A stretch of DNA of 64,000 bases from Chlorokybus atmophyticus (GCA_009103225.1 RHPI01001043.1:63978-127977), one strand, 5' to 3'. Positions 1-40,900 are shown, numbered from the stretch's first letter. Program-made: numbers and translations. The notes: a model not told the origin generated them from the sequence alone.

Positions 1-34
1 CATAGACATGTATCCACTCACACCCTCCCCTCAG

Positions 35-3000
35 GTGGGGCAAGTGGTTCCGCGAGCAGTGGGCTGTTACCTCCACAACCAGCGACCCTTCCCCTTCTGA
101 TTGGCATGGCAGCGAGGCTTACTGGCTCGGTCCCAACGTTCCATACACTTGCCCGGGCGGGTCCACTCCTGCCACAAACGGGCAGGGCTGCCAAAACATC
201 GACCCGCAATACACACCGAGAGTTTCCTACTTCCATGTGAAGTTTCCATATTCGGTCCATGACGATAAGAGTATTGTGACCGAGTGTCCGGACCCGTTTT
301 ACTGTGATTATAAGGGACCGGGAGGGAATGTGCCGAGTAATTGTGGGAGTGCGGTTAATGCGTATGTGACGGATAAGACCAAGTGCGCGCCGTGGTCACA
401 GGTGTGTGTGCGTGTGCGTGCGTGTATCTGTATCTGTGTGCATGTATCTCTGTGCCATTGTTGACTCTGTTGGGGATGCAGGTTTACGGGTTCTTCTATG
501 GTGATGGCAACGCTGAGGACATCATCATGCTGGTGGATTCCATCGACGATACGAACAACCTAATCATCGGAAACTACCTGACGGGCGTCAGCCGATGGAC
601 ATACGATTACAGGTATGATACCAATACCACATGTTGGGTATACACACAACAACAACAAATACCCAACCCAACCCAACATGCGTGTCACACGCGCAGTTTG
701 CCTCCGAGCGGCTCATCCATGATTGCCTCCCAACCCGCGACATACGTCGCTTACTTCACCGGCGGCGACCGCGTGTACGAGTGCAGCGTCCCTTGGAACA
801 CCAACCCTGGCGTGTGTCCCACCCCACTCAACTACCTCCTCAACAACAACGCGCAGGGCCGCTTCCGCTTGGAGATCGAAATCAAAGTCACGGGAGATGG
901 CAACCGCTCCCCTATAGTGACACAAATACCCATCATGCCCGTCATGCACGTGGCGCATCCCAACTATGCGCGATTCCAAATAGCGGCATATGACCTCGAT
1001 CCCGTTGACAATAGGAACTTACAATTTAGGTTTGGTAATACGCGTGAGATGGGTGGGATTATGAGGAGTAAAGCGGATGGGGTTGTGAATAGTGCGGCGT
1101 ATTATGGCAACTTTGATTGCAATCAAGCCATGTATGAGGAGGATAGGGATGGAGATGGACAACCGGATAATAAGTGTCCCGATGATAGGACGCCGGTGCA
1201 GACGCCGCAAGCGGGAAACTCGTTCCCGACCACGGCCAAAGTGCCGGGACTCGTCGTGTGGCAGGTATGTGTGTGTGTGTGTGTATGTGTGTGTGTGCGT
1301 GTGCGTGCATGTATAGATGTGTATGCTAATCTGACCACCTGTTGGCTATCAGACCTGGCTGGATAGTGCTCCGGAGCAGAAGCTTCGTGCCGGTCTTTAC
1401 AACATGGTGGTGATGGTGTCGGACGGCAAGGTGAAGGTGCCGCTCGACTTCATGCTCTACCTCTACGACGGCAACCTCAACTTCTGCAACGAAAACTGCC
1501 TCAGCAACGTCGCCGGGACACCCACATTTGCCAGTACGTGCGCGTGCGTGTTGCATAGTCACTTGCATCGTCGTCAAGCCACTGAGTCACACCCAACAAC
1601 ACAGATAGCGATGGTATCTACGGCACCCAGCACTGCACCATCTGCGGTCTTGGAGATGGCGACTTCACCCTCTGCCAGCCCGATTCGGAGAACCTCGGCT
1701 CCGGCAACTCCACCTGCGGAGAAGTGAGCAGTTGCTGACGTTGACTCACTTCTGTCACTTGTTGAAAACTGCATTGCACACATACGCGCCCACTCGCACG
1801 TGAAAACATAGTGCACACACGCACACAAACAACAAAGTAAGCCCACAAGCCCAAACGCACGCCCACGCGCCCACACGCGCCCACGCACGCATACATATAT
1901 ACGCACACGCACACCCCAACACCCACATCCCCACTCAGGTTTCTGGCACCGCTCTCGTTCCCGTCCCCACCTCCTGCAAGCCCAACACCATGCCCACCTT
2001 CATCTCCACCGACGGCGACCAGTCCCGCAACCCGGGCGTCGAGAACTGGCTCGCCGCGTTGGACCTCACACAGTACAACGTCCCCGTGATGACAAAGTAC
2101 AGGGGAGATCCCTTCCAGTTCGATATCATCGCCGAAGACACGGACGATTGCACCACGCTGGACATCGAGACGACGGGTCTGCCTGAGGGGGCGTTCTTTG
2201 AGGACTATGTGGACTTGACGGAGCAGGGTGTGAACGGGGCCAAAGGGAGCAGGTTGTTTAGTTGGGAGGCAAGCGATGCGGATAATGATGATAGGCCCGC
2301 GCTGTCGCAGGTGGGGATGGGGGATGTGTTGGGGTGTATGTTGGGTTGGGTTGGATTGGGATGGGGTGGGGTGTGGGGGGATGGGGTGGGGCGGGGGTGA
2401 TGTGGGGCTGATGTGAATTTGTTGTGCAGGTCTGCTTCTATGCGTTCGATCAGTACCTCATCACCGCACTGCCGTTCTACTGCATCCAGCTTAAGATCAT
2501 TGACCGTCCCGTCCCAGAAGAACAGGTATGTTGACTTTGATGACACATTGGTGTCTGCACGTGTGTGTGGCACAAGAACATGCGCAGTTGCACACACGCA
2601 CGCATGTGCGCATGCGTGCGTGCCTGCGAACGTACGCACGCACGCACACACACACACACACGTGTACACAACATCATTGTATCCAACTGACCTTCCAATT
2701 CACACCAGGTCCTTCTGCGTTTCGACTGCAAGCTCGCGCTGCTTTACCAGACGGCAGAAAAGCGCTACGGCGTGTACGACGCGGGGACGTACTACTGGTC
2801 CAACTGCACGTACGAGGACTACGCGTGGCACCACGCAGCAATCGCCGTTGACGAAGCTGGAAGCGGCTCACTCATCGGTAATGAGCAGAGAGAGACACAC
2901 ACACACACACACACACACATGTGGCTGTGTGCATGCGTGTGTGATATCGCTAACTTGCCTACTGAACAGTTGACGGGAGTGTTGTGGCGGAGTTTGTCAC

Positions 3001-6000
3001 CTCCACCTACCCGACCATGTGCGATATCGTCTCGGCGCCCCCACCTCCAACAAGAAGGTGCGATTTTACAAGCCTCACTCAACTGCACACTTACACATTA
3101 CGCGCACACTCACATTCGTGCACATGGGCGCAAAACCAACTACGTGCACGCACGCGCGTGCGTGCACACTTACACATACACACATACACTTACACATACC
3201 CCCACCCACCCGCCACAGGTTGCTTTCCTACAACGACGTTGTTTCCGGCTCCCTCCCCTCTCCCCTCTACACTCCCGAGATCCGCAGTGGCTTCGTGGAC
3301 GTCAATGATGTTGTCGCTGAGGGCGACCCGGACGCGTGCTGCACGTTCAAGATCGGGATGGCGTGCCCCGCGAGTCACTTACCGTCCTTCGACGGGTTTG
3401 TCGACGAGGTGGTGGTGTACGACAGGAAGATCACGGTTGAAGAAGTGTGGGTGAGTGATGATGAGAACACGTACTCTGAGTGGGGTTGTTCACCTTGAGA
3501 TAGCACACGCGCACACGCACGCATGCACGCACGCACACGCACGCACGCACGCACATGTGCACGCACGCATACACATGCATTTGTGCTAATATGTGTGGCT
3601 CTCTCTTGTAGGATGTTATGTTCAGGATGCCGATGCACCTGCCCACGCGCGTGCTGGAGGCGCCGCGCGGTCTGCAGTTGGATGTCACGGCGGGAAGGGT
3701 GCTGTGGGCGAGGTTCAACAACCCGTGCCAAGAGGGGAAAATAGGTCAGCGAGGGAGTGAGTGTTTGTCTCTTGAGTACTGTTGCAACAGCAGTTGTAAG
3801 ACAAGTTCGATCATGTCGTGCAGTCGAATGTGTACATGTGCGTATGTGTACATGCAAGTACACATGCACACATACACATATACACATCAATGTGTGCACC
3901 ACATGCAGCAATACTTACTCGTCCGTTCACCAATGCTTCTCCTAAGATGCGTGCGTTCTGCAGTGGTTTCTCCCCCACCTCCTTCCCCTCCTCCCCCCCA
4001 TCCTCCTCCTCCCACTCCTCCCCCTCCTTCTCCTCCCCCTCCCGACACGGGCGGCCGTCGCCGCCTCCTCCAGATGGAAGGTCCCCCACCCAACACTGTC
4101 ATCGACCACGTCACGGACAAGGCCGGGTACACCGCCGGCGTGTACAACAACAACGAGACAAACATCATTGATGTGGATGATGATGTTGTCACGTTTGCGG
4201 GGAGTAGTTTCCCAACGCATTCCAAGTATGTGTACACGCCGGCGCCGTTCATGCCTGCTATGTTAGAGGGTGAGGGTGAGGAGCGTGTTCTGCATGTTGG
4301 GGATGCGAACGATGTTGTGTTTGGAGGTGTTGGGTTCGCGCGCTCGCCGTTCTTGCAGTGCGGGTTCGGGATGGAGGATAACAGAGATGATGTGGGGATG
4401 TTGTATCGGCCGCGGGAGGTGAATGATCAACCCTTCTATGATGAGTACTTTAGGGATATGCCGAAGGTTTACGAGTATGAGAGTGGCCGAGAGTGGAAGG
4501 AGACCACGTTTGGGGATGTCGCACCCGCATTTGTCGCGGATGTCAACGGCAACGCTTTGACACATGATGAAGTCGTCGATACCATCAACTCTGCGGTTAG
4601 TGTGTTTGCTCACGCACAGGCTTGCTCGCATGCGCGCGCGCACATAGATGCAGGCACTGCGCACACACACATACACACACTCACACGCTCTCGGGCCTGA
4701 CTGCAGACCTTCTACCTCACAAACCCCCACACCGACCGGCAATCCGCGTACCTCTTCTCCCCGGGTTTCCCTTTCATCTCCTGTTCCTCCCCCTCCCCAT
4801 CTTTCTCCACCCACAGAGCCTCCCTCACAGTCCTCAACGGCGGCCGCGTGGCCGCCACACCCCAACACGTCACATTCATGGAGCGCGTGGCACGCCTGTC
4901 CAACACAACGAGTGCGACATTGAGTGTCTCTGTACCGGAGGACGCGATGAGTATGAGTGTGGCGATGTGGGTGAAGGTGAAGGAGGCCACGGGTGATGCG
5001 CAGACGGTGGTGAGCGCGGAGGGTGCGGGTGGCACGAGTGTTGCGGTGCAGTTTGTGGATGGGAAGTTCCTGCTGGCGGCTCCCGCTGTTGTCACGTAAG
5101 CTGGATTGACATGCAATGCACACATGCACACACACACACACACACACACGCACGCATTCGTTGTTTAGCTCCCATAATACAAGTGCACATGTTTGTGTAT
5201 GTTGGTGGGCGCGCGCGTATGTGCATGGATGAGTGTGTCTGCCACCTCCTGCACATGCACGCACAGTTGTACACGTAAGCGCCTGCATGCGCTTGTAGGC
5301 ATGCATACACTTGATATGTGCACTCGTATGTCGCATCTGGACATGCTTGTACATTTATGCACATTCAACTTACTCATCACCTGTGTGAGCAGGCAGCAAG
5401 AGCAGGAGGCCAACACGTCCACAACAGGCCAATGGCACCATGTTGCCGTCTCCATCAACCGCGTGGCCACGCTCTTCATCGACGGCGTGACCGTGTACGA
5501 GAGCGAGTCCCTCACCATCCCAACATCTCCTCTTTCTCTCGTGCTCGGCCCCATCGACGCCGACATCGACGAGCTGAGAGTATACTCGCACGGCATCGAT
5601 GAGAACACATTACCCCACATCATGTTCAACAAAGACCTTCCCGACAACAACAGCGAGGAGCTTACATTGGCCGCACACATGCGCTTCACCGATGCGCTTA
5701 TTGACGATATCTCAGGGAACTTGGCTGATGTCAATGGTGCTGTCGAGTATATCTTTGCGGCCGTGCCTTGGCAACCAGCTTATATCGACGAGGTGAACGA
5801 CGTATTGGTGGAGTTGAAGCCTCTCGCTAAGAGCAAGATGACGGGAGGAGAAGAGCTGGTTGTTAAAGGGTTCAACTTTGCTGCTTCGCCATCGTTGCAA
5901 TGCGTGTGGGGACACAAAGTGCTCGTCCATGACAACTCTCTCTGTGAGGTACATAAACACCTGCGTATGCATACGCGCGTGTGGGTATGTGTACGTGCAC

Positions 6001-9000
6001 ATACGCACATGTGCATATGTATATGCGTGCGCGCACGAACACACATGCAAGCACAGCGTGCGCACATAGACACACAATTGCATCCTGATTGGTGTAACAT
6101 GCTGATATATACGTATCCGCCAGGTTGACAGCAACATTAATGCCACCGGCTGCTTGGAGGGCCTGGACTTGATATCCTCCATCGCTCCCGCACGCACATG
6201 TGCGAAGCCGATGTCGGCCCCGACCTACACCATCATTCCAATATACTCCACCGACGCGACCGTCAATGAAGCCGGCACGGAGATATCTTGCATCACACCT
6301 GTTGTGAATGAGACTCTTGTATTGGATTTCGGCATCGGCGGGTTGATGAGCGAACCCGTCAAGTGGGCTTTCACTGAGGTTGCGCTGGCGTGTGAAGGCG
6401 TTGGGTCGTATGCGACAACTGAGCAGGAGTTTGGTTTGGTGTTTGACAAGAAGAGAGCGTTTGCGTTCGGTGGGTGGGTTATGCCGAGAGATACGAATGA
6501 AACAGCCAGCGTGATGGCGTTTGATAACCCGCAGTCCACGCATGGACGAGTGTCGATTGATTATGATGGAGAGGCTTTCTCGTATTTTGACTCCTATATT
6601 GGCTCCATCTCTCACGTAAGTACATGCGAATTGCAGCATACACATGCATGCACACAGACAGCCGCAGACACACACACTCGCGCAAACACACGCCAGCACA
6701 TGCGCGCGCGCACACCCCCACATGCACACCTATGCACGCGTGCGCGCGCACACGCATGACTTTGCGCATTCGTGCATACGTGCACACACACATACATGTA
6801 TGCACACGCACACACTCACACTAACGTTTCACACTCATGCAGGCTGCTTTTGCCACCCCCAACATGTGGCACTACGTCTTCGTTTCCGTTGCTTCCGACG
6901 GCGAGGGCGTCTTCTACGTCGACGACTCTCCCCCCCTCTTCTTCACCACACGCGGCCGTCCCTCAGGTTCATTCACCCTCTGCAACACTGGCAATGTAGC
7001 CAACAACCAGCCCTTCTCTGGCCTCATCGATGAAGTGAAGTTGTTCACCCGCGCAATGTCCACACGTGAAGTGTATCACCACATGTGGGGTCAACTAACC
7101 GGCTTTGAGGACGGTTTGGTTGGTTATTACGGCTTCAATAGTCTAAACCAAGCTGGCAATCAAGTGGAGAGCTTAACCGGTGATGCGGTTGCGGCGTTAA
7201 CTCTAACCGGTGCTCAGTTAGTTGAGTCCTCTGCTGTTTGGCTTCCCGCTACTGTTATCGATATCCAGCCCGGTAATGGTGATATTGCCATCACCGCAGC
7301 GAATATCGCCCCGAGCAAGTGGCTGACTGCCTCTTTCGATGGAGTTGATATCAACGACCCGTCTCAGATAACAGTCGAGGGCGATATCATCATTGTGATG
7401 AGGAGTCCGGCCCTGCCTATGGGGTCGATATCGGCGTCGGTGATGAACTCACCGACATCGGCTTCATCCACAGATGCTATGGAATACGACAACATGCCAT
7501 CCATATCGGATCTGCGGGCCCTACTGGAAGCCCACTACACTTTCAGCCTCACTCTTCCCGCAGAAGACAACAGTGGCTTTGTTGTTGTGGACTACTCTGG
7601 CAATGAGAGACACGGCAGCTATGTGTTTGGCGAAGACGGGTCCAGCACAGTCACCAAGGTGGGTGTACTAAACTCAACAACATGACCAACATTGTGGTAA
7701 TGTGTGCATGTGGACTAATGTGTGTATCTCTCCCCCCTGTAGGATCGCAATGCTGTTGATAACGGGGCGGTTGTTGTTGGTCCACACGCGCGTGGAGCGG
7801 CGATATCCATCCCCGTCCCAGCAGACTACTTGTCTCATGTTGCTAATGGCACTGAGGACGCCCTGTATGATCCCTTCACTGTCTCCATGTGGATCTACAT
7901 TGAACATAACCAGACGGTAAGTGCCGTCTGTCTTTGTGCATGTGTGTGTGCGAGTGTCCGCGTGTGGGTGCATGTGGGTGCGCGTGCAAATGCGCGTGTG
8001 TACCTGTGCATGTGCGTGTGTGTGTGTGTGTGCGCGTGTGCATGTGGGTGCAGGTGTCCGTGCATGAGCGTGTGGTGTGCATGCGCATGTCAGCGTGCGT
8101 CTGTGTCATCGTGTGCACACACGCAAGCGTGCACATGCATGTGTCACTTACTGACAGCTTGACTCATCCACAGTTTGAGGCCCCCGCATCCATCTTGGGT
8201 GCCTACAAGCACGTTGCTGGCGTGTTCAATGGTGAGAGCGGGTCCGTCTACCTCAACGGCCTGCTGCTGAACGACACGGATACCACCGACATCCTCGGCA
8301 TCGCCCTCGCCACCCTTCTCACCAACGGCACGTTGTCCAACATCAACGCGCGCATGGACGAGATGTGGGTTTACTCCCGCGCACTGTCTCAGCTGGAGAT
8401 ATCCGCTCAGTATTTCACTCACGCGTACGCTCTGGACTTTGCTAACGCCGATATCGATGCCACGGCCACAGCAGTTGCATCTTTCCCACCCAACAGGTTC
8501 ACGCTCGAAGCGTGGGTTTACTGTTACAACACTGCTGGAGTCCAGACAGTGATATCGAAGCCGCACGGGGACGACAACAAGCCCGGAGTCTCTTTCGGTC
8601 TCAACGACGGGCATGTGTATCTGTCTATCTACGGCGGGTGCGATATTCAGCCTTGCTACAACGCGTACGCGGAGCTGATATCGTTCCGAGCCGTCGCAAA
8701 GGAGCGCACGTGGCAACATATCGCTGCCACGTGGGTTGATATCGGTGGCGAGGACCCCGTCATGTTCGTTTATATTGATGGGATACTCAAAGACAAGCAG
8801 GTGTTCCCCGGTTTTGTCTCGGATATTGGTGCCACGAGTCCCTCTATCGTCGTTATCGGCCAGGAGTCCACAGCACAAGGGGACAACATGAACCGATTCA
8901 ACGGGTTGATAACACATGTTGCTATCACTGAAGATGGATTGAGACCAAGTGGTAATATCAGAGCTGCAATCACTCCTCCATTCGTTATCAAAGACAGAGT

Positions 9001-12000
9001 GCTCTGCCCTGTTTGGCTGAGCCGATATCTCGACTCCGAGGCCGATATCACTCCTCTGGCAGGGATGAAGTCCGACTATATCACTCACATGTGGACCTTT
9101 GGTGAAGGCACGGGCAGTGTATCCGCTGGTTGGGCTGATATTAATGCTCGAGAGCTGGCCGCAGTGTGGATATTGTCTCAGAGCCTCTGGACAAATGTCT
9201 CATATGACGACCCTGCAGCTGCTTTTGCAACAGAAGTATCGGGACCTGCCTTGGAAATCATTGATTCAGGCGAAGCCGGTTTGTTAACCATAACCGTACG
9301 AAGCTCGTGCTCGATTAGGCGGTTAGTTGGCAGTGATGTTGTGTCGATATCCGCCACATTGGCTGCAAACGACTCGATATCAGCTCAAGTTGGGGTTATT
9401 GACCTCAATGATGGGACGTATATCGCCACCATCACACCCGATATCGGTATATGCGGGGTGTATAATGTGGTTGTGACAGTCAATAATGAAACAGCAGCCA
9501 CATTCGACACATCTGCTATGGCGGGACCCGCTTCGGCTGCCACAACTTCTGCTTTGACAGACCCAACGTTAGCCAACAACGCGGGTGTGAAGACCACACT
9601 CACAGTGCAGGCGCGCGACATCAACGGGTGTGATAAATCTATGGGTGGAGATGGTATCGCTGTTCACCTCACCGGCCCGCACGATATCGACGCGGATGTT
9701 GAGGACATGGGCAACGGACAGTATGTGGTGTCGTATACGCCACAAGTGAAGGGCATGTATGTCATGACTGCCACCGTGAATGGCACACAAGGACCCGAGA
9801 GCTTCATCTCCAACGCATGTGTACACGTCGCAGGTGAGGGGATATACGCATGTGTACACGTCCTGTGGTGTTGTACATGGTTTGCGTGTTGTACATGTTC
9901 CTGATGTTGTTGTGTTGTTGTGTCGGGCACAGCGGGTACGTCCTTGAACTTCAACGGTCAGACTAGTGTGGAGGTCTTGCACACGCCCTCGTTGTCTCTC
10001 ACCACGCCAGGGCTCACGATGTCGGCGTGGGTGAACCCGCAAGGCATCGTGCGGCAGTCCCCGCCACCGCCCTCACCTCCACCACCATCGCCCCCGCCAC
10101 CCTCACCGCCTCCACCACCTCCACCGTCGCCACCGCCGCCATCACCACCTGCGCCATCACCTCCACCACCCTCACCATGTAAGTGTGTGTGTGTGTGTGC
10201 GCGTCAGTGTGTACGTGCGCGCGCGCACACACACACACAATGCGTGCATGTGTGTGTTGTGGCAGAAGAGATGCACGATTCTTATGTTGCTGTGTGTATG
10301 TGTGCAGCTCCTCCCCCACCTGAGGCGGGTGGTAGGCGTCGTTTGCTGGCTTCTGGCGGCCCGTACTGGCGTGACCCGAGCTACCGTTTCATCTTCAACA
10401 AGAACGGTCAGGACTACGTGTACACGCCTTCCAAGAGCTACGACTTCAAGTTCACTCCCGACTACAGCGAGCTCGTGGCCACGGTTTACGTTGGCAACGC
10501 CGAATGGCGTGAAGTGAGAGCTCCATACACCAACATGGACACGTGGACACACGTAGCAGCCGTATACAACCAAACAACCTTCTCTCTATATCAAGACGGG
10601 GAGCTTATCGGACAAGAAATCTTCTCTCTTCCCAAGAAGATTGCATCCGATATCCTCCACAGACCGCTCGATATCGGCTTCGCCTTCACGGGGATGATCG
10701 ACGAGGCCACGTTGTGGCGTGTGGCGAGGACACAACAAGAGATTGTGGACACGATGCATTGCCCGCCATACATGGAGCTAGATAAGGTGGCTGCGTATTG
10801 GAGCTTTAATGATGGGAGCGGGGATGTGGCAAAGGGGTACGCGCATGACTGCTGGGTGGAGGACTATTCCAAGACATGCCTTGAAGGTGCGTGTGTGTGT
10901 GTGCTTGCGTGCACACGTGCGCGTGTGTGTGAGTACTCTCCCCAACCAGCCAGTCTGCTCTTGCGCATTCACACCTTGCGTGTTGTGCATATCTGATGCA
11001 CCATACACATCACTGACAAGGCGGTTGTTTGTTGTGTTCATATGGCGTTGTGGTAGTGTGGATTGTTGACACTCTTACGCGTGTATCACCCAGGCAACTT
11101 GGACCCCTGGCACGCGCCGTTGGGTCCCCCCACATGGGAGAACGACAACACCACCACCGCCGTTGAGGACGCTTTCTCCCACCTCGGCGTGGGCATTGTA
11201 AGTGCCCTCCACACCAGCGTGTACGGTCCCGGGTTGGCTTCCACACGCACGCACGCGTCGACACAACACGTCCTCATCCAAGCCAAGGACGAGTGCAAGT
11301 ACTGTTACGTTGGACGGGAGGCTCACTTTGTCATTGAGACAACCAAGTTTGATATACAGTACTACAACGATGTTCATGATAGCGTGGAGTATCCGCTTGT
11401 TGTGAAGAGTGTGACAGAGAGATACGATCTCGCGCCAAACTGCCCCGCGCAAGATATCTGCTTCGGGACTGCCGATGTCGGTAACGCCACCACCACGAAT
11501 AGCAGCGATAGCGCTGCCTTGCGCAGGCGCTTGCTCGGAGATAATGTTCCCGAGGGGCTGTTTGTCGCCAACCACACCATCGATATCGACGTGCTGGGCG
11601 AATTCGCTTGCACGGGCGATCTCTGGGCTGCCTTGTATGATATCGGCAACGCTGGCACTTACTTCCTCAATGTGATGCTGCTGGGTGACGGCAATATCAT
11701 CCCGGATGTCCCTCTCACCGACGAGCCCTTTGTTATAGAGGTCACGGCCGGAGATATCGCCAGCTTGGAGATGCTGGATGCGCCGCCATCGATACAAGCT
11801 ACTGCAGGCGTTATGACTGCGATTACCGTGATTGCAAAGGATGGAACCGAGGAACAGGTGAGCACACTATTGCATTGTTGCAGTGTGTGTTTATATTTGT
11901 GTGCATATACGCGCGCGCACGCGCATGTCTGCAATTGTGCGCGTGTGTCCACACATGCATGTTTCTGTCTGTCACTGCATGTACGTGCTCATGTGCACAT

Positions 12001-14471
12001 ATCTGTGTGCGTGTATAGCATCTCTCTCGTTGACACCAACACACTTAACTCTCCTGCAGGCGAACATCATCACTGATCGCGATCTCACGGAGCAGATATC
12101 CACAATGGTGTCCATCACCCAGGCCAGTCTCCCCGACGGGGTGGAGATAGCCACCCTCATCAACAACATCAATGGAGGCCGATACCCCGTGTCTTTCATC
12201 GTGTACACGCCAGGCGTATACACACTCTCCATCAACGGGACCGAGACGGATATCGTTGTCTCACCTGCAGAAGCCACAACTGCTCTGAGTGCTGGAGCGC
12301 TGCCGAAATCGCTCGCACGGTCCGGACACGCTGCTGTGGCTTATAACAGGGATGTGTTTATCTTCGGTGGTGCGGATATTACCACGGGGGCGAAGCTGAA
12401 CGATACGTGGGTGTTGCGTGATGCTGATATCGAGCCCTCGAGCACACTCAACTATGTTATCCACCTCGCAGTGAAGCCCAGCGCTGCCTTTGATATCGAC
12501 ACCACCTTCCGTATCGCTGTCCCGACAGATTATCTGCTGGAGGCAGGGCAGATATCACCCTCATGCACGGATGTCGCCTTCAGGCTTGAGGGAGGACCCG
12601 TACTCGCATACTATGTGGACATGTGGACTTGTGGCACGCAAGAGACAGTCTTCTGGGTCCGCGTCCCCGCCACCGCTACCACCATCTCAGGCGATATCTT
12701 CACTCTGGAGATGTATTTCGGTAACCCCATGGCCGCTATCAGCATTCAGCTGCCTGAGTCTGTCTTCGATTTCTATGAAGGATTCGAGGGTGGAATCGAC
12801 ATCGGAAATTTCCGGCCCGCTATTGGCTGCGGGCTTACTGATGCATCAGCAGATGGGTTTATTATCGCTGAGGAGCTGTCGTATGCGGGTGATAAGAGTC
12901 TGTATGTCAGATTCGGCACCGCTGGTGCGATTGAGGCCGATATCGACCCCACGGACAGCTTCATCCTGCGTGCGAGCTTCTATGACTCCGATAGCGAGAG
13001 CGCGGCTCATTATATCAGTCCCAATTTCGATATCTGCACCGAGAGCGCCGATAGCGAGCGTCTTCTCCTGCCCGGTGATGCAGATATCGACAACACCCAA
13101 CATAAGAGCACTGCACTCGGCGTGTACACGCTCTCGACAAAGAGCAAGTATGCACTCGCATCGCCGTGGGAGTCTGTGCCAGCGAGCCGACACGCTGGCT
13201 GGCGTCACTTTGAAATCCGCAGCAATGTCACCGGCACAAGCGCGTACATCGCTGGCGAGCTCGTCTGGTTTGATATGGCTCCCATTAACATTGATAAGGT
13301 GTTCATCAGTGCCGGCATCGCTGGTTTCAACGACCAACTTGGAGCGCCCAACATGCTCCCTGCACACGCCTTCTGGGACGAGATATCCGTTGTCAAGGTA
13401 CGTGTGTGTACGTGTGTGTGACTACTGCGTGCGCGTATGCGTGTGAGTGCGCGTGCTCGTATACACATGTGCGCATGCTCACACTCACACGCACACGCAC
13501 ATGCGCATGTGCCAGTTGATGTGCATGTGGGTATCTGTGTGTGTGCGCACACCTCGCAATCATCCAGCGCTCATACATGCCTGCACTGTGCATAACAGCT
13601 GCTGAACTCTGCATCCCTGCAGGTACACGCAGCCGCAGTTGATATTGAGATCACAGCAGACTCACCCCAACGTGCTGACTTCGCACACGAGCGAACGTGG
13701 GAACAGTTGGACATCACAACCACGCAGCAAATCCCACCCGGGCGTGATGGCCACACCGCTGTCATGTACAACGACGCAATGTACATCTTCGGTGGTGAGG
13801 GCGACAACACTGTCGTGTTCAACGACGTGTGGGAGTTCAACCTCACGACGCTCGCGTGGAGAAACATCAGCACACAAGAGGGTGAGAACACTCTCACCCC
13901 GAGCGCGCGATATCAACACGCAGCTGCTGTCAGCTCCGATGGCGTGATTTATATCTTCGGCGGGCGCAATGATACAGACTTGTTTGAGGATGTGTGGGCT
14001 TTCGATATCGCTGCCAGCACGTGGATTGAGGTCGAGAGGGTTGAAATCGGCATTCGCTACGGCCACACAGCAGTTGTATCTGAAGATGTTGTTTATATCT
14101 ACGGTGGGTACACCGATGACGGCGTATCCGACAGCTTCGTCGCTTTCGATATCGCCACAGGCGACTTGATATCGCTGCCGGGCTTCCAGCCAGCTTCTTC
14201 ACATTACACTGGGCGATATCGACACGCTTCAGCTGCACAAAGCGGCTTCGTGTATATCTTTGGTGGCTCTGATACTGACTCAGCAACAGAGTACACAGAC
14301 ATGTGGCAGTTTGACATCGGCTCCAAGGCATGGACTCTTGTTGAACAATTCACCGGTGATATCGCTCCTGGAGCTGCGGGCTTTGCGATATCGAGCAGGG
14401 TGTGCTGGCAAGGCGGCCGGATATCGGACACCCTCTGTTATCCTGTGCCATACGCCAGCCATCAAGGTTGA
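35..14471 (+). CDS. Giant multidomain extracellular protein, 5'-partial, about 3,650 codons in 23 exons. It has cadherin/He_PIG-like Ig repeats, about 6 LamG/concanavalin A-like domains, TIG/IPT-like and filamin-type Ig repeats, Ser-Pro4 linkers, a DUF2341-like domain and a C-terminal Kelch propeller.
   Basis: Hand-spliced exons keep phase throughout: 35-401, 482-612, 697-1264, 1353-1533, 1605-1723, 1939-2310, 2430-2525, 2709-2877, 2970-3057, 3219-3450, 3612-3744, 3964-4595, 4707-5095, 5393-5948, 6124-6615, 6843-7658, 7743-7916, 8174-9833, 9933-10178, 10308-10886, 11094-11857, 12060-13397, 13623-14471, all GT-AG. LamG motifs: WHHAAIAV..FDGFVDEVVVY, WHHVAVS..DIDELRVY, WHYVFVS..FSGLIDEVKLF, FTLEAWVY..WQHIAATW, WTHVAAVY..FTGMIDEATLW. 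Filamin-like: VEDMGNGQYVVSYTPQVKGMY. Kelch: GHTAVMYNDAMYIFGG, YGHTAVVSEDVVYIYGG. No C-terminal TM segment seen; start codon lies left of the window. Confidence 0.88.
402..13622. repeat. Intronic alternating purine-pyrimidine (CA/TG/CG/TA) microsatellite tracts in most introns of the giant gene; similar tracts occur in introns at 15-16, 18, 23-30, 34, 44, 56-58 and 62.8-63.9 kb
   Basis: Directly visible, e.g. 1265-1315 (GT)n, 2620-2665 (CA)n/(GCAC)n, 7935-8145 TG-rich, 13398-13550. Confidence 0.95.
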
Positions 14472-14475
14472 TATC
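7260..14475. repeat. Highly iterated dispersed palindrome GATATC (often CGATATCG) within coding exons
   Basis: Manual count of 41 GATATC sites between 7260 and 14470, e.g. 7347, 7383, 7427, 8398, 8450, 9024, 9044, 12426, 12492, 12551, 14148, 14168, 14215, 14358, 14387, 14420. About 1.8 would be expected at uniform base composition. Confidence 0.9.
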
Positions 14476-14864: not shown

Positions 14865-16830
14865 TTATGTTTTCATAAGCAGCACAACGGTGTGGCACGC
14901 CACGCTGCGGTTTTCCCCGAGGCTGTCGACGTTTTCATGCGTCTTGGCTTTGAGGTTGACAACGGAGGCGGGGACGCCCAACAACTCGCATATGTTCTTG
15001 ATGATGACCGGCTTGTGGGGACTCAACTTGGGCCGTTGTAGTATGATTGTGGCGTCGAGGTTGCCTATTGCATAACCCGCCTCGGTCATGCGCCTCACCT
15101 GAGCACACAGATGGTTTAATAAATGTGGGTATGTGTGAAGATTGCGAGTGTGTGCGTGTGCATGTGCGTGTGCATGCGTGTGTGTGTATGAGTGTGTATT
15201 GTGTTCTTACTGCTTCTTTCATGAAGACAGAGCTGGCGGCGCCTTTCCATTTGGGGTCGTTATCGGGGAAAAGCTGGCCAATATCGGGCAGGCCGAGCGC
15301 GCCGAGCAGCGCGTCCACAATACAGTGCATCAACACATCACCTGCGTGAACACAAACACCGACATGAGATAATCAACATGAGAGTAGGATTTCTGCAAGC
15401 GCAAACTGATACTCACCATCTGAGTGGGCGTCGCAGCCGCGATCATGTGGTATGTCTACGCCGCCGATAATCAGCTTCCGCCCTGGCTCCAGCCTGCAGC
15501 GCGAAAGGCATTGGGCTTGCATCCACAAAACGCATAGACACACCCGTGTTTGTGCGTGTGCGTGCGGTACAAATGCGGCGGTGAAGATGAACAGCTGTAT
15601 ACGCATGCATGCTCGGGGTGGTCTGCATGTGGTTGGCATGTACCCACACAAGCCATGTACATCTACTCAGCTTGTGCACGTGGCATCATGGGTACTAAGG
15701 GCAGAAAGATGTCTCTAGGTGCAAGAATGAGGGTATGCGCCTCCCACATTGTAAACAGGCGTACCATGCATGCATACGCAGCTGTACAGCCCCGCATCTA
15801 TCCACATTACGTGCAGTCATTTTCCGTCACACACACACACATGCATACACACACACGCGCAAGACGCTTTCATGCACACAACCGCAGTTGCAGATGGCAA
15901 GTTCGCCACTGACCAGCGGATGAAACATAACACATGACAGCGCGCACACCTGTGGAGGTCGAAGCCGTGGCCGACGCGGAAAGGCAACACCGGCGTGGAT
16001 GACGACGAAGAAGGCGATAGCGAAGGAGCGGTCTCGGTTGCCGCGGCCTCCGCCAAGACGGGAGACACTACTCTGTGTTGTTGCTGTCGTTGTGGTGTCC
16101 GCTGTCCCCACTGCATGCACCAAAAGGCTTTTTGAAACAACTTGTGATTCGTGCTCAGCACATTGCTTGCACAAGTGCTGCTTGAGGCTGACTATCAAGG
16201 CAAACGGGTGTGCCTTCAGCTTTCAAAACTGCACAAAGTGCAGTTAAAAGCAGCATCTCTGTGTCACGCACTTATTGATTGGGGTAATACGCGATTCATG
16301 GATGGAACACATGCACGCGTTTACTCGTCAACAAGGCATTGACTGCTTGTATGCATGCTTCAACAAGCGAACGCATGCACAACCGAATGGCTGAACGCAT
16401 GTGTACACCTGGATGACTGTACTTAGGACAGAAGTCCGACTGTCCGACTAAATGCATGCACAAGGAAATGAAGTTAGTGACTGACCAGGCGCAGACTCCC
16501 TCTCTTGCAGCACAATGGGCTGCTGCTACTAACAGAACACCATGTTTGTGACTGGAAACTTGATGACGTAAACCAACCCTGGCTGCGCACTGCCACCCCA
16601 AAGCGAATGCGTGCGAACAAACGCTTACACAAATGCAATGAACAACCTATTGCTTGCAGCTGCATTACCTGCAGGGAAAGGCCTCTTCTCCTGGCAGCAG
16701 GGGAGAGCGCTGCGCGGGTCAGCGGCGGCGAGCTTGCGGAGGAGGAGGAGGAGGAGGCCCTTGCGCTTGTGGTCAACGGGCTGATTGTCGTCACAGGCGA
16801 CCACACCGACGCCGCCATCGCCGCCATCAT
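14865..16830 (-). CDS. ispF: 2-C-methyl-D-erythritol 2,4-cyclodiphosphate synthase (MEP pathway), plastid-targeted
   Basis: Exons 16830-16669, 16110-15950, 15493-15417, 15341-15211, 15098-14865 splice in frame. They give a Ser/Ala-rich transit peptide followed by [54 protein letters not shown] and NLKAKTHE, which are hallmark IspF motifs. Confidence 0.97.
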
Positions 16831-19618: not shown

Positions 19619-21230
19619 CAAGCACTCGCGTGCATGCTTGCGGGAAATGCGTGTTGGGTTGCACATGGATGTGGCGTAAGTTAACAGCAGGATATTCTTT
19701 GCAAGGTTCGGACTTGAGGGTTGCCCCCTTGCCATGGGTATGAAAAGCGTAGTGTTTATGATGTAGTCTCTCTATCGACATTGTACACAATCAGCACGAC
19801 ACAGTTGCCCATTTATAGAACATGTCCATGGACCAACCAGTTGTGATAGAGACATCTATCATATGTGTTGGTTAAGATGGGCGGAATAACTCATTTTGGG
19901 ACGGAACCACTGATTCCGTTTGTGTTTCCGTAGTGGCTATAGAAGCAAGTATGGACACTGCACTGTATCTCTCGCTATCTACTTAAAGGAAAAGAGAGAA
20001 AACGTTCACACAGTGGCCGGATTGTACCAAGCTGCGCCCTCTAGCACGCACTAATGACACACTGCACTAGGCAATGGCGTAAACACCACATGTTTTCCGG
20101 CTTGGAGGGGACCTGCCAATGTTGTGTGTGGGTTGTTCCTGCCCACATGCTTGCCTCACACTGGGATAGGTAGCGAAGTATTTGCAAGGCACACAACAAA
20201 GGGCGGCAGGACCCTACTGCAGGGCCCTAAAACCCTTAATCAGAAGTTAGCAAGGCATGATGTGCTCCAACATTATGATCAAATTGGTGCATGCAAGCAG
20301 CCTGCATTGGGATGCAACGCTAAATTATATGATCAGTGGACAACACATCAGCGGTACTTGTAACGTGCATACGGTTCCTCTTTGCATCTTGTGTACAAAC
20401 GACCGCCTAGCTATAGCCACGTGTGGTAAGTTACCATACATGTTTACGCAACTTTTGTGTGACTTAAGTTGTTGTTGCTAGCTTGACACCATGGCATGTG
20501 GTGCATACACGCAATCCTTGGCTTTATACATTCCCTCTTGGATCTTTTGTATACATGTATACATATGCTAGCACATGTGGCATGCACGCACGCACGCACG
20601 CAATGATTAAAATCAAGCTAGAGAGTGCGAGACACATGTGTCAGCAAGGAGAGAGTGAGAGAGAATAATGCACTCAGTGCGTGTGGCATACGCATAAACA
20701 TGCGTGAACACACTCATGCATAACATTTTATACAAGCACGTCGCATACAGTATGCTATTGCACGTACCTGTGTGCGCGCGCGCATCAATCAACAACAACG
20801 TATACAATGTCTGCGACATGCACGATTGTGCATACATACATACCATTAATCTTGTTACATTGGAGTGAAGTATATTGTGCAAACAACTAGCTAACATTAA
20901 CATTGTAGTAGTATCATTACGTAACCATTAATATCAATCTTGAATGCGAGAGAATGGCAGCGAATGGCGCTATGCTGTTATCCTCTCCAGACCATGCTGT
21001 AATAAACATGCATGCAACCATAACTAATCTCAAGATCGATATAGCAATGTAGTACTGTTTATGAATCTGTCAGCATTTTGCTATCGTAATAATGTACAAG
21101 TAAGGTATTTGCTTGAACAAATATATAAAGCTGTAGAGTGACGCCTAGCAAAAGCCCTTACTCTCCCATTTGCATCAAATGCAATCTGATGGACCTATCG
21201 CTCTTGTAAGAATAATGTGTGGGTGGGGGG

Positions 21231-21769
21231 NNNNNNNNNNNNNNNNNNNNNNNNNNNNNNNNNNNNNNNNNNNNNNNNNNNNNNNNNNNNNNNNNNNNNN
21301 NNNNNNNNNNNNNNNNNNNNNNNNNNNNNNNNNNNNNNNNNNNNNNNNNNNNNNNNNNNNNNNNNNNNNNNNNNNNNNNNNNNNNNNNNNNNNNNNNNNN
21401 NNNNNNNNNNNNNNNNNNNNNNNNNNNNNNNNNNNNNNNNNNNNNNNNNNNNNNNNNNNNNNNNNNNNNNNNNNNNNNNNNNNNNNNNNNNNNNNNNNNN
21501 NNNNNNNNNNNNNNNNNNNNNNNNNNNNNNNNNNNNNNNNNNNNNNNNNNNNNNNNNNNNNNNNNNNNNNNNNNNNNNNNNNNNNNNNNNNNNNNNNNNN
21601 NNNNNNNNNNNNNNNNNNNNNNNNNNNNNNNNNNNNNNNNNNNNNNNNNNNNNNNNNNNNNNNNNNNNNNNNNNNNNNNNNNNNNNNNNNNNNNNNNNNN
21701 NNNNNNNNNNNNNNNNNNNNNNNNNNNNNNNNNNNNNNNNNNNNNNNNNNNNNNNNNNNCCCCCCCCCC
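21231..21769. other. Assembly gap (539 N)
   Basis: N run flanked by a G-run on the left and a C-run on the right. Confidence 1.
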
Positions 21770-37937: not shown

Positions 37938-40900
37938 ATGCCCGGCGGTGGCTTGTGCTGCCCGGCTCTGTTCCAAAGACGAAGCAAAAAACAATTACGA
38001 CAAGCACAACACCACAATGGGGAAGCCAAACACCACACTGAAACCCACGATCCATCATCATCCGGCAACACAGCCGCACTAGCACACAGCGACTCAGCCT
38101 CCGCAAAGGTAAGCACGCTCACACGCAACCATACAGGTTCCAGCTAGTTCCTGCTTTGTTAGTCGTCGATTGGGGTTAATTGCCCTATATATGGCAGGTG
38201 TTGCCAATTGTGGGCAAGAGTGAACCTGGACCAGATCAGCAGAGGCTGGCTGCGAGCGTTGATGAGGCGCAGGCGAGTAACGATCCGGGGTTCGTTACTG
38301 CTCGGGACCTATCAGTTGCGGCTCCAGAAGCCTCGGGCGCCGTGCTCAGCGCAGAAGACAGTAAGTGGCCTGTATCTGCATGCTTGCGGGGGGGAGGGGG
38401 NNNNNNNNNNNNNNNNNNNNNNNNNNNNNNNNNNNNNNNNNNNNNNNNNNNNNNNNNNNNNNNNNNNNNNNNNNNNNNNNNNNNNNNNNNNNNGCTGACC
38501 AATTGCTGGCAAGTTGACTGCTTACAAGTTGTTCACTGCTTGAGCGGTTAGTAGCGCTCATTGTTGCATGAACACGTTTTTCTCTGCCTGCATACATATC
38601 TTTCTGGTTTGCACGCCGCTTCATTGTAGTGTGCAGTACCTTAGTACTACTTATGTTAATTGCTTGTATGTACATGTCTATCTGTTGCAAGTGGGTTATC
38701 ACTCGAATTGGAAAAAGGAGCAGTATATGTCTATGTCGTTGACTGTGGCCCAAAATGTGCTTGCCTTACTGCTTGTTCTTACAACAGTCGAGCTATGTAA
38801 ACATTTATGCGAATGTGTGTTAATCAGATGCTCTCATTTCAAGACGTTTGCACTCACGCTGGTGTGTCTGCAGGTTTTGACAGCAGCACCTATCATGACG
38901 CCGAGGCCTCGTTCACATCAGGAACAGCAGACACAGCAGGCAGCACTAGCATGAACAACACTGACGATTCACACTCGCATTCCCGTGGCCCGGGCGGGTT
39001 TCTCCGCTCTCTGAGGCAATTATCATTTGATGCGAGAGAACGTGAGCAGTATAAAGTGGACCCGGGCGGCAGTTTGGACCGGGAGAGGAGGCACACTGTG
39101 ACTGGGGACCATAATGTCCAACCTCATGTGGCGGGCTCAGATGATGGCGCGCATGGTGACAGATCGCATGCGAGCTTCCGGGATTGGCTGAAAGTGAGCT
39201 TGTGTGGCATGCATTGTCTGTTGGTGCTCTGTTAGATGTGTGCATGTTCATGCTTTCCAGCATTGTTGCACTCAATAGGCATCTACACCATTGACTCCAT
39301 GCATTGGCACACGTATCAAAGCCAATATTCGCATGCATGCATTTGGGTGACACCAGTTGTGTTGGCCAGCATGTTGGCCAGCATCGCCGGATTCAGCAGG
39401 CATACAAGCGATAAATAATGACAAATGTGCGCATGCTGTTGTGCGATGGCACTGCGAACAGTAATATTGGAAGCGCACTTCTGTAATAACCAGTGTCATG
39501 CATAACACTGTACGTACAGGTGCAGTCGTTGCTGGTTGTGTTTGATATGGATCTTCTTGCGTGCAATCCTGTCAAGAAGATAGCTGTGCATACGTATCCT
39601 GGTATATGCAATACTGTAGTAGCGGGTTTGGATCTGGAGGCTAGACTCAAAGCTTGTGCACAACATGCATATACAATTTGCACACATGACTGTATGCCAA
39701 GGGCTTGTATGTTTGTGTATTGATATACTCTCAAGTAATGTATCTTCCTTCTTCCTGCACAAACGCACACAACTGTGCACATTGTTATCTTTTCTGATAT
39801 GCAATCTCATGACGCTGATGGCACTGCTTGCAGGCCATCTCCCTTCCCAAGTCCAAACGCCAACTGCAAACTATACACTCCGAGCAGCCAGGTAGCCACT
39901 TACTGCATGCACGCAAGTGACAACTTGCATTGCCATTTGCTGCTAAAAGTGTGTGTTGCAGCACATGCATACAACATCAATACTTGACTGATTTCGTGAT
40001 GATGATGATTATGATTTGGTGCAGTGCTGCCGCTGCGATTGGTGCCCGGAAGCACGCTCGCTGGTGCGAGTATTACCGGCCATGCGGTTGAGGTAACAGA
40101 GCCGTTCGATGTCCGAGGACCCAAGTACTTCAAGTAAGTGTTGTTCAACAACAATCCATACAGGCTCCTCGCCATGTAGAGTCTGTCAATGCGTATAAAT
40201 TCGTGTTGTCAGCATGCATTCTCCTCCGTTATTAAATAGTTAATGTACTTTTGCACATCAATTGCTGCTGACCGCAGACCTTCGTTTTGCCTAACTGTTA
40301 CTTTTTTCTTGGACTGTGCTTGTGATTGAACCTTTTTGGTTCAGGGACAAGAAGAAGCAGCCCTCAGAACAGCCAGTCTATCAATTGCTAGCCGCAGGTA
40401 CTGTTAGCCTCTCAGCTTCTGATCCAGTCTGATCCAGTGTTTGGTCCAACACATGCTTCTTAACATTTGGCGGCATTACAGACGCACTGAAAAGCCCCAG
40501 CAAACTGTACCACATTACTCAGCATTTTGAGCTCGCACAACCGAGCCCGATGGTCGCCCGCAACCCAGCCGGCCTGCCGCCTTACTTGGTGGTGAATGTC
40601 CAGCTGCCGGACTACAGCCCGCCGTTGTGGGCGGGCGAAGATGCGGATGGCCCGAGCATTCAGCTGGTGTTCTTCTTCGCTTTGCGGGCAGAGTTTGTCG
40701 CGAAGCCCACCGATGCCACTCTCAAACTGCTGCAGGTAAGTTGTGTCTGATCTCGTCACAATGATTACAATTGCAGTGATGCAATGACCACACCTGTGTT
40801 ATTTTACAGCGGTTTGTGCAAGATCATCAGGAGCCTCATACCCGCGGTTTGTTTGGAGGAGGAGTGGACAAGTTCAGGGAGAGGCTAAAGCTTTTAGCGC

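What the first reader, a model, noticed from the sequence alone, without database searches (positions are those of the whole stretch)
7260..14475. HIP1-like highly iterated palindrome GATATC written into the coding sequence of the giant gene
Seen: 41 GATATC sites in about 6 kb of exon, versus about 1.5-1.8 expected. Eleven of them are the 8-mer CGATATCG. Only 6 occur in the first 7.2 kb of the window, and I found roughly a dozen in the other 49 kb, which is background level. The motif occurs in all three frames: GAT-ATC (Asp-Ile), xxG-ATA-TCx (Ile-Ser using ATA, e.g. 7427, 8398, 8551, 9346, 12551, 14387) and CGA-TAT-C (Arg-Tyr at 9024, 13909, 14215). It even overlaps the stop codon at 14469-14475. 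Amino-acid composition alone cannot explain frame independence. Known: cyanobacteria iterate GCGATCGC (HIP1) frame-independently, with a proposed link to methyltransferase sites; GATATC is the EcoRV/M.EcoRV site; green algae carry ApT 6mA. Inference: a DNA-level process (a methylation or repair-driven motif, a protein-binding array, or an imprint from a donor genome) acts on or shaped this locus. I know of no description of this in a eukaryotic gene.
Basis: partly seen in the sequence, partly recalled or inferred. Interest (0 to 1): 0.85.

Follow-up and report, generated by a model that had tools for sequence, protein, structure and literature searches.

The report
GATATC palindrome written into algal gene
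The last 7 kb of one giant cell-surface-type gene of the alga Chlorokybus holds 41 copies of the six-letter palindrome GATATC, about three times what its protein and codon usage allow. The pressure has changed some thirty amino acids, a pattern known genome-wide in cyanobacteria, and I found no report of it for a single eukaryotic nuclear gene.

Summary
There are 41 GATATC in 7260-14475: 40 in coding sequence and one across the stop codon. They lie in all three frames, and 11 are CGATATCG.

GATATC is the single top outlier among all hexamers.

The protein itself is reshaped. Asp-Ile occurs 36 times against 10.5 expected. Isoleucine is 6.6% against 2-4% in homologues. Only 9 of 40 sites sit on a dipeptide that any homologue shares.

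The gene is native: it has GT-AG introns confirmed by RNA contigs, and homologues across green algae. Two orthologue genes, a same-genome paralogue (judged from its protein), control coding sequence in the window and the gene's own 5' half lack the enrichment.

An RNA contig from another run with the same species label, about 2% different, keeps the density (13 sites against 12) but has swapped 5 sites. That is more turnover than random substitution gives.

What reads the motif is unknown. My best guess is a gene-specific array for a dimeric DNA-level reader. A HIP1-like repair drive is a close rival. "Exon-only" cannot be proven, because the introns are compositionally barren for this word.

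The scan flagged the same motif at one other locus of this genome (s1-186383, unchecked).

The parts
7260..14475 (.). GATATC-dense tract: 41 exact sites (5.7 per kb), 11 of them CGATATCG. Spacing looks random and density rises towards the 3' end.
   Evidence: for counts; no periodicity, CDS spacing CV about 1; 5'->3' gradient, Spearman 0.84, p 0.001; the only non-microsatellite word clustered anywhere in the window.
6837..7658 (+). Exon (Laminin_G_3 end). The first 423 nt have no site; then 4 sites (7260, 7347, 7383, 7427).
   Evidence: Frame and GT donor read. Pfam.
7743..7916 (+). Exon, 1 site (7802).
8174..9833 (+). Exon with Laminin_G_3 and Filamin repeat; 11 sites.
   Evidence: The donor is confirmed by the RNA joint 9830->9930.
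9933..10178 (+). Exon ending in a Pro-rich PPPSPPPP spacer; no site.
10308..10886 (+). Exon (Laminin_G_3), 2 sites.
   Evidence: RNA joint 10884->11092.
11094..11857 (+). Exon, 4 sites. The related run X2 has a fifth at 11693.
   Evidence: RNA joint 11854->12057 in X1..
12060..13397 (+). Exon (first Kelch blade, DUF2341), 10 sites. X2 lacks 12939 and 13029 and has extra sites at 12305 and 12375.
13623..14471 (+). Last exon (Kelch propeller), 8 sites plus one (14470-14475) overlapping the TGA stop at 14469-14471.
   Evidence: RNA joint 13395->13621, and X1 contig identical over 13621-14475.
7917..8173 (+). Example of the seven TG-rich, microsatellite-like GT-AG introns of the tract. The others are 7659-7742, 9834-9932, 10179-10307, 10887-11093, 11858-12059 and 13398-13622. 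No intron holds a site.
   Evidence: Markov expectation 0.04 sites in all introns together.
1..6836 (+). 5' part of the same gene (it runs off the window start). It has short exons and only 6 sites. Asp-Ile is at expectation (6 against 4.2). GATATC is 5 against 2.7 by synonymous shuffle.

Best explanation
Shown, with confidence about 0.9:
- In the Chlorokybus lineage a directional force acting on the nucleotide word itself has been writing GATATC into the coding sequence of the 3' roughly 7 kb of this native giant gene (Laminin_G_3, Filamin, DUF2341 and Kelch domains).
- It uses about two thirds of all synonymous opportunities. Beyond that, it has replaced roughly 30 dipeptides with Asp-Ile, Ile-Ser or Arg-Tyr.
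- Site number, not site position, is what is kept. Sites are gained and lost quickly between close relatives.

Inferred mechanism, to which I commit at the confidence given:
- The sites form a gene-specific array that is selected for its number.
- The array is read by a sequence-specific, probably dimeric, factor on double-stranded DNA of the gene body. Candidates are a restriction-endonuclease-fold protein or a transcription-factor-like protein that marks or regulates this very long transcription unit.
- Density rises towards the 3' end.
- An RNA-level reading of GAUAUC in the coding region of the mRNA is the less likely form of the same idea.
For: Nucleotide-level force:
- Synonymous shuffle gives 13.4 +/- 2.8 against 40 observed.
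- GATATC is the unique top hexamer, z 9.3.
- Only zero spacing of GAT and ATC is enriched.
- All three frames are used.

Protein reshaped:
- Asp-Ile 36 against 10.5 expected.
- In the region aligned to the same-genome paralogue: DI 22 against 6, IS 11 against 3, RY 5 against 2. Ile is 7.0% against 3.5%.
- 9 of 40 sites lie on a dipeptide shared with any homologue.

Gene-specific:
- The rest of the window is at background, 13 sites in 49.5 kb.
- Control coding sequence has 2 against 1.2.
- The convergent neighbour just downstream has none.
- The paralogue and orthologue proteins have normal DI.
- Orthologue genes have 2 sites in 13.9 kb and 1 in 11.3 kb.

Number kept, not position:
- The X2 contig has 13 sites against 12 in 11094-13032, with 5 site-changing differences among 37.
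- Random placement gives 1.6 (P = 0.014).
- For the three sites extra in X2, random placement gives 0.13 (P = 0.00025).

Other:
- Density rises along the coding sequence and ends at the stop codon.
- A palindrome suits a dimeric reader of duplex DNA; this is established knowledge of type II enzymes and dimeric transcription factors.
- The sites are real. Independent RNA contigs (X1) are identical over 20 of them.
Against: - No reader protein is identified.
- Nothing here tells DNA from RNA, because a palindrome has no strand.
- There is no phasing or clustering that would suggest cooperative binding.
- Forty sites is a large number for a regulatory array.
- The amino-acid cost fits a selfish drive at least as well as it fits selection.
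- GATC avoidance in the same gene points to DNA enzymology that could equally serve a repair drive.
- Genome-wide distribution could not be examined. A second locus is only reported by another first-stage note (unchecked).
Confidence: 0.35

Rival explanations
1. A HIP1- or VSP-like molecular drive. A GATATC-specific enzyme (nickase, mismatch endonuclease or methyltransferase-coupled repair) resolves mismatches in near-cognate sequences towards GATATC during repair or gene conversion. Sites then accumulate without benefit to the gene, even at some cost to the protein.
For: - The word is palindromic and the enrichment is frame-independent.
- Sites turn over fast, with an excess of apparent gains.
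- About 30 amino-acid replacements were tolerated, as biased conversion can force.
- One-mismatch neighbours are also raised: 58 in 6 kb.
- GATC is three-fold depleted in both halves of the same gene but not in the orthologues. This hints that DNA enzymes of this specificity class matter here.
- Other scan notes list restriction-fold proteins and palindrome-array transposons in this genome (unchecked leads).
Against: - A drive should act wherever composition allows. Yet the rest of the window, the convergent neighbour gene and the gene's own first kilobases are at background.
- The same-genome paralogue shows no Asp-Ile excess.
- The four one-mismatch sites in introns have not been converted, though this is weak evidence.
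- The cause of the locus restriction would have to be invented.
Confidence: 0.25
2. An mRNA-level array. GAUAUC in the coding region is bound by an RNA-binding protein or small-RNA seed, or pairs with other copies. It would control storage, localisation or translation of this 13-kb-plus mRNA.
For: - All 40 coding sites are in mature mRNA.
- The array ends at the stop codon and rises towards the 3' end.
- The gene is transcribed and spliced as modelled.
- Enrichment is specific to this transcript.
Against: - A single-strand reader has no reason to prefer a palindrome.
- Predicted accessibility of the sites equals that of composition-matched hexamers: median unpaired probability 0.046 against 0.040, p 0.58.
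- Absence from introns and the downstream 460 nt is uninformative, because their baseline expectation is 0.03-0.04 sites.
- No site spans an exon junction, but only about 0.2 would be expected.
Confidence: 0.15
3. A historical imprint. The 3' part of the gene spent time in, or was converted from, a copy in another genome (a virus or a related alga) where GATATC is favoured. The sites would be decaying fossils kept only where coding constraint holds them.
For: - The enrichment is confined to one tract whose left edge lies inside an exon.
- Exons in the tract are longer than in the 5' part.
Against: - The closest relative of the tract is the alga's own paralogue, then Mesostigma.
- Codon usage apart from the sites matches the 5' half.
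- Host-type introns interrupt the tract.
- The left side is a gradient, not a sharp edge.
- The 2%-diverged relative has three sites that are absent here. A pure decay model explains this only by a loss rate above background (P about 0.01-0.04).
Confidence: 0.05
4. An ordinary by-product. Amino-acid composition, codon or codon-pair bias, internal duplications or transposon footprints produce the count.
For: - Asp-Ile, Ile-Ser and Arg-Tyr are legitimate dipeptides, and some sites sit on conserved ones such as PHDI, PLDI, WDEIS and the Kelch Arg-Tyr.
- The flanking C and G partly follow codon periodicity.
Against: - The protein-preserving shuffle fails by z 9.3.
- Control coding sequence and the 5' half, with the same codon usage, show no excess.
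- No repeat unit carries the sites.
- In the alignment the sites are substitutions, not two-residue insertions.
- Sites are not concentrated near splice sites (positions), so they are not classical splicing enhancers.
Confidence: 0.02

Closest known systems
HIP1 (GCGATCGC), the highly iterated palindrome of cyanobacteria (PMC4390886; PMC13756078)
   Same: A short palindrome is many-fold over-represented. It lies inside genes in all frames and bends codon and amino-acid choice. A link to sequence-specific DNA enzymes is suspected. Its function is still unsettled.
   Different: HIP1 is genome-wide in prokaryotes, is tied to identified orphan methyltransferases, and is described as evolutionarily conserved (PMC13756078 abstract). 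Here the word is a hexamer in a spliced eukaryotic nuclear gene. It is confined to one gene in 64 kb, sites turn over fast, and no cognate enzyme is known.
DNA uptake sequences (USS/DUS) of Haemophilus and Neisseria, and Chi/KOPS-type oriented words (from my own knowledge)
   Same: Words are enriched by a drive or by selection at the DNA level. They are tolerated inside coding sequence at some cost to protein sequence.
   Different: Those are genome-wide, bacterial, mostly non-palindromic or strand-oriented, and tied to known machines (uptake receptor, RecBCD, FtsK). None is restricted to a single gene.
ZNF274/TRIM28-bound 3' coding exons of human zinc-finger genes (from my own knowledge)
   Same: A DNA-binding protein reads a motif that lies in the coding sequence of 3' exons and marks the gene body. 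This is a precedent for a DNA-level array inside exons with a 3' bias.
   Different: There the motif is a by-product of a repeated protein-coding unit. Here the sites are in unique sequence and were created against the ancestral protein sequence.
Exonic splicing enhancers
   Same: They are exon-located, frame-independent and known to bias codon and amino-acid use.
   Different: ESEs concentrate within about 70 nt of splice sites, occur in most genes and are usually purine-rich. These sites are spread at random through exons up to 1.7 kb long and are absent from neighbouring genes.

Membership tests
HIP1-type highly iterated palindrome | A short palindromic word many-fold above the expectation from composition | tested here: met
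   41 sites against about 1.4 (zero-order) in 7.2 kb. Top hexamer, z 33.
HIP1-type highly iterated palindrome | Occurs in coding sequence in all frames and overrides codon and amino-acid preference | tested here: met
   Frames 24/13/3. Synonymous shuffle gives 13.4 against 40. Asp-Ile 36 against 10.5.
HIP1-type highly iterated palindrome | Genome-wide distribution | tested here: not met
   Within the window, 13 sites lie in the other 49.5 kb, which is background. Control coding sequence has 2 against 1.2. The paralogue protein has normal Asp-Ile.
HIP1-type highly iterated palindrome | Individual sites conserved between relatives | tested here: not met
   5 site-changing differences against 1.6 expected among 37 substitutions to a 2%-diverged relative.
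HIP1-type highly iterated palindrome | Cognate (orphan) DNA methyltransferase that recognises the word | not testable with these tools
   No access to the rest of the genome or to modification data. There are only unchecked scan leads. A preprint states that Streptophyta lack abundant 6mA.
Exonic splicing enhancer | Enrichment near splice sites and presence in most spliced genes | tested here: not met
   Most sites are more than 100 nt from exon ends. Spacing is random. Neighbouring spliced genes lack the word.
Internal repeat or domain duplication | Sites carried by copies of one repeated unit | tested here: not met
   Repeat families are intron microsatellites and the Pro-rich spacer. Only one weak 22-nt family (D7) touches 3 sites. 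The flanks differ.
Transposon excision footprint (6-bp insertion) | Each site is a two-residue insertion relative to homologues | tested here: not met
   In the 9-sequence alignment the sites align to residues, often similar ones (D-V/L, E-I, R-F), and not to systematic 2-residue gaps.
Horizontally acquired segment (donor imprint) | Closest relatives outside the host lineage, and foreign codon usage | tested here: not met
   Best hits are the Chlorokybus paralogue, Mesostigma and other green algae. Asp, Ile and Tyr codon usage outside the sites matches the 5' half.

The most novel reading that the evidence does not exclude
Chlorokybus has an active, sequence-specific system (a GATATC-reading restriction-fold, methyltransferase or repair protein) that targets particular nuclear loci. 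It continually rewrites their coding sequence towards the palindrome. This would be a eukaryotic, locus-addressed counterpart of cyanobacterial HIP1, strong enough to override protein conservation.
Probability: 0.25. Interest if true: 0.85.

Novelty: new variant of a known kind. Interest (0 to 1): 0.68.

Why it matters
Iterated palindromes that override the genetic code's degeneracy, and even the protein sequence, are known from bacteria, where their cause is still debated. A clean case in a spliced nuclear gene of an early-diverging streptophyte would show that such nucleotide-level forces also act in eukaryotes and can be addressed to single loci. This case is confined to one gene, absent from its paralogue and orthologues, and turning over between near-identical strains.

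It also offers a small, tractable test bed of about 40 sites with several sequenced sister species. That could separate selection for a site array from a repair or conversion drive.

Practically, it warns that amino-acid composition and substitution patterns in such genes are not evidence about protein function. Here Ile is doubled, Asp-Ile is 3.4-fold above expectation and dN/dS is about 0.4.

Tried and rejected
- Six-base insertion or transposon-footprint idea: rejected by alignment with eight homologues, where the sites are substitutions.
- Duplicated units: rejected.
- Splicing-enhancer reading: no edge bias.
- Nucleosome-like or other periodicity: the best period is 161 bp with power 6.3, below the 95% null of 8.2.
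- RNA accessibility: no difference from composition-matched hexamers.
- Other gene-specific "barcode" words in the window: none apart from microsatellites.
- Spaced half-sites (GAT Nk ATC, ATC Nk GAT): none enriched.
- Extended 8-mer CGATATCG as the true motif: the C/G flanks exceed codon-position background only modestly and follow the GNC codon periodicity.
- "Exon-only" as proof of an RNA or coding-level process: withdrawn after the Markov baseline for introns came to 0.04 sites.
- Link between TG-type introns and the tract: the first two introns of the gene are also TG-type but lie in a site-free part.

Searches that gave nothing:
- The look-up of encoding contigs for the Chlorokybus paralogue and the Mesostigma orthologue.
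- Two homologous-protein searches with single exons, limited by the length window.
- The findings index searched by sequence.
- Literature searches for GATATC with Chlorokybus or with algae.


Full report
**1. The observation**

GATATC occurs 60 times in the window, against 8.2 +/- 2.7 in dinucleotide-preserving shuffles. Of these, 41 lie in 7260-14475, 6 in 1-7259 and 13 in the remaining 49.5 kb. CGATATCG occurs 11 times in the tract.

Within the tract GATATC is the most over-represented hexamer of all: 41 against about 1.4 from base composition. It stands ahead of the intron microsatellite words. It is also the only non-microsatellite word that is locally clustered anywhere in the window.

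**2. The gene**

Reading frames and GT..AG boundaries give eight exons for the 3' part:
- 6837-7658
- 7743-7916
- 8174-9833
- 9933-10178
- 10308-10886
- 11094-11857
- 12060-13397
- 13623-14471, with the TGA stop at 14469-14471

Spliced RNA contigs from a public run (X1) match the window without a single difference. They show exactly the introns 9834-9932, 10887-11093, 11858-12059 and 13398-13622, and they cover 20 of the sites. The sites are therefore real, transcribed and unedited.

The protein carries Laminin_G_3 domains, a Filamin repeat, DUF2341 and a Kelch propeller. The 5' part of the window belongs to the same gene.

Earlier scan notes name the organism as Chlorokybus. In agreement, the best database hit is a Chlorokybus atmophyticus protein, a paralogue at 44-48% identity. 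Next come Mesostigma, Tetraselmis, Pyramimonas, Pycnococcus and Cymbomonas proteins of 3000-4200 residues that align over the whole 3' half. The gene is a vertically inherited member of a green-algal family of giant proteins.

**3. Is it more than the protein and codon usage give?**

Forty sites lie in coding sequence and one spans the stop. The frames are 24 GAT-ATC, 13 xxG-ATA-TCx and 3 CGA-TAT-C.

I permuted synonymous codons within the gene, which keeps both the protein and the gene's own codon usage. This gives 13.4 +/- 2.8, with a largest value of 24 in 5000 permutations. The test is conservative, because it keeps the ATA, GAT and ATC codons that the motif itself brought in. The same test applied to all hexamers puts GATATC alone at the top, z 9.3.

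About two thirds of all synonymous opportunities are used:
- Asp-Ile is GATATC in 24 of 36 cases.
- Ile-Ser is ATA-TCN in 14 of 20 cases, and 13 of those are preceded by G.
- Arg-Tyr is CGA-TAT in 3 of 6 cases.

**4. The protein has been reshaped**

- Asp-Ile occurs 36 times against 10.5 expected from residue frequencies.
- Across the stretch aligned to the same-genome paralogue, this protein has DI 22, IS 11 and RY 5 with Ile at 7.0%. The paralogue has 6, 3 and 2 with Ile at 3.5%. The other homologues resemble the paralogue.
- In a nine-sequence alignment the sites align to residues, not to two-residue gaps. Only 9 of 40 sit on a dipeptide that any homologue shares. These include PHDI, PLDI, WDEIS and the Kelch Arg-Tyr.
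- So roughly 30 sites needed lineage-specific amino-acid changes, typically from D-V/L, E-I or R-F.

**5. Where it is not**

- The 5' half of the same gene has Asp-Ile at expectation (6 against 4.2). Its GATATC count is 5 against 2.7 by synonymous shuffle.
- About 5.4 kb of other open reading frames in the window has 2 against 1.2.
- In the rest of the window GATATC is no commoner than GACATC (13 each, counted on one strand), whereas in the tract it is 41 against 6.
- The orthologous genes of Pycnococcus and Cymbomonas, fetched as DNA, hold 2 sites in 13.9 kb and 1 in 11.3 kb, as expected from composition.

The enrichment is therefore specific to the lineage and to the gene.

**6. Distribution**

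- Spacing along the coding sequence is close to exponential (CV about 1), with no significant period.
- Sites are not concentrated near exon ends.
- They are not carried by repeats.
- Density rises along the gene. It goes from 0-3 per kb in the first 4 kb of coding sequence to 4-7 per kb, with 7 sites in the last 360 nt (Spearman 0.84, p 0.001).
- There are no sites in the 1.2 kb of introns or in the 460 nt downstream. Those sequences are TG/CA-rich or otherwise poor in the needed dinucleotides. Their first-order Markov expectation is 0.03-0.04 sites, so even a 20- to 60-fold enrichment predicts about 1-2 sites. I therefore do not regard exon restriction as established.

**7. Turnover**

A second RNA run with the same species label (X2) gives a 6.2-kb spliced contig that differs at about 2% of exon positions. 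The table of differences is cut off. It appears complete, bar one position, for 11094-13032.

In that span there are 37 substitutions, 17 synonymous and 20 not. The window has 12 sites and X2 has 13:
- Ten sites are shared.
- Two are only in the window (12939, 13029).
- Three are only in X2 (11693, 12305, 12375).

I placed the same substitutions at random on the same bases:
- 1.5 site losses were expected, and 2 observed.
- 0.13 site gains were expected, and 3 observed (P = 0.00025).
- 1.6 site-changing events in all were expected, and 5 observed (P = 0.014).

Without an outgroup the direction of each change is unknown. Either way, sites change faster than the background while the number stays level. 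Individual sites are not conserved; the density is.

**8. What it is**

The facts require a force that acts on the word GATATC itself and that is strong enough to change the protein. It acts on this gene and not on its neighbours or its paralogue, and it is still active or only recently stopped.

A palindrome is what a dimeric reader of duplex DNA prefers, whereas a single-strand RNA reader has no reason to prefer one. Predicted accessibility of the sites in the mRNA is no different from that of composition-matched hexamers.

The gene specificity, the gradient along the transcription unit and the interchangeability of sites fit best a selected array of sites for a sequence-specific reader. I put this at 0.35 and prefer the DNA level.

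A HIP1- or VSP-like biased-repair drive (0.25) explains the amino-acid cost and the turnover equally well. It needs an unexplained restriction to this locus.

The other readings score lower:
- mRNA-level array: 0.15
- donor imprint: 0.05
- ordinary by-products: 0.02

The remainder is for something not thought of.

**9. A second anomaly in the same gene**

GATC is about three-fold rarer than synonymous shuffles predict in both halves of the gene: 10 against 28 and 6 against 19. It is only mildly low in control coding sequence, 10 against 16. It is normal in the two orthologue genes, 62 against 51 and 42 against 42. In the 3' half part of this depletion follows from GAT and ATC being paired with each other. 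In the 5' half it does not. This hints that DNA enzymology of the GATC/GATATC class matters for this gene, but I could not take it further.

**10. Known things**

HIP1 is the nearest described phenomenon (PMC4390886; PMC13756078). It differs in being genome-wide, prokaryotic, conserved and linked to known methyltransferases.

I found no paper that joins GATATC with Chlorokybus, or with algal coding sequence.

A 2026 preprint states that Streptophyta lack abundant genomic 6mA (10.64898/2026.05.21.726589). This weakens the ApT 6mA idea for this organism.

Other first-stage notes report the following in the same genome:
- the same motif enrichment over three adjacent genes on another piece (s1-186383);
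- transposons with their own palindrome arrays;
- several restriction-fold proteins.

I could not check any of these, and they are leads only.

**11. Limits**

- Only this window, two orthologue loci and homologous proteins were available.
- The paralogue was judged from its protein alone.
- The X2 comparison covers 1.7 kb of exon and has no polarity.
- The genome-wide picture, DNA modification and any reader protein are untested.

Noticed in passing
window 1-14475: GATC is about three-fold depleted in the giant gene against synonymous shuffles: 6 against 19 in the 5' half and 10 against 28 in the 3' half. It is only mildly low in other ORFs of the window (10 against 16) and normal in the Pycnococcus and Cymbomonas orthologue genes.
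   Followed up: partly
window 402-13622 (introns of the giant gene): The introns are microsatellite-like and come in two strand types. TG-rich: the first two introns and all seven in 7659-13622. CA-rich: most introns between 1724 and 6836. The switch to TG-type at about 7 kb coincides with the start of the GATATC-dense part, but the first two TG-type introns lie in a site-free part.
   Followed up: partly
window 11487, 11843-12059: The 2%-diverged transcript (run X2) lacks 3 nt at 11487. It joins 11843 to 12057 with two extra letters, instead of using the 11857/12060 junction seen in run X1. This is a shifted donor or a local sequence difference.
   Followed up: no
window 11094-13032: Against run X2 there are 20 non-synonymous and 17 synonymous differences, roughly dN/dS 0.4. 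This is a fast-evolving protein region.
   Followed up: no
window 10057-10176 and 3960-4080: Pro-rich PPPSPPPP spacers are followed by GGRRRLL-type motifs. Unrelated runs X3 and X4 pile up only on this low-complexity stretch.
   Followed up: no
window 14476-64000: CATG and its extensions (TGCATG, GCATGC, CATGCA) are about 2.5- to 9-fold over-represented outside the giant gene. CATG occurs 493 times against 191 expected, and in control ORFs 40 times against 23.5 by synonymous shuffle.
   Followed up: no
window 17593, 31226, 54067, 62076: Four CGATATCG octamers lie outside the giant gene. Of the 19 GATATC outside the tract, 5 carry the C...G flanks (one, at 3022, is in the gene's 5' part), the same share as inside it.
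   Followed up: partly
window about 21230-21760 and about 38400-38500: Two runs of N (assembly gaps). An (AT)n / TACATA-rich low-complexity cluster lies at about 31.5-36 kb.
   Followed up: no
window 14935-15336 (- strand): A convergent neighbour gene has a product that looks to me like IspF (I did not search it). It ends about 460 nt from the giant gene's stop. The X2 contig runs 2.5 kb past the stop, so the two 3' ends may overlap in RNA assemblies.
   Followed up: no
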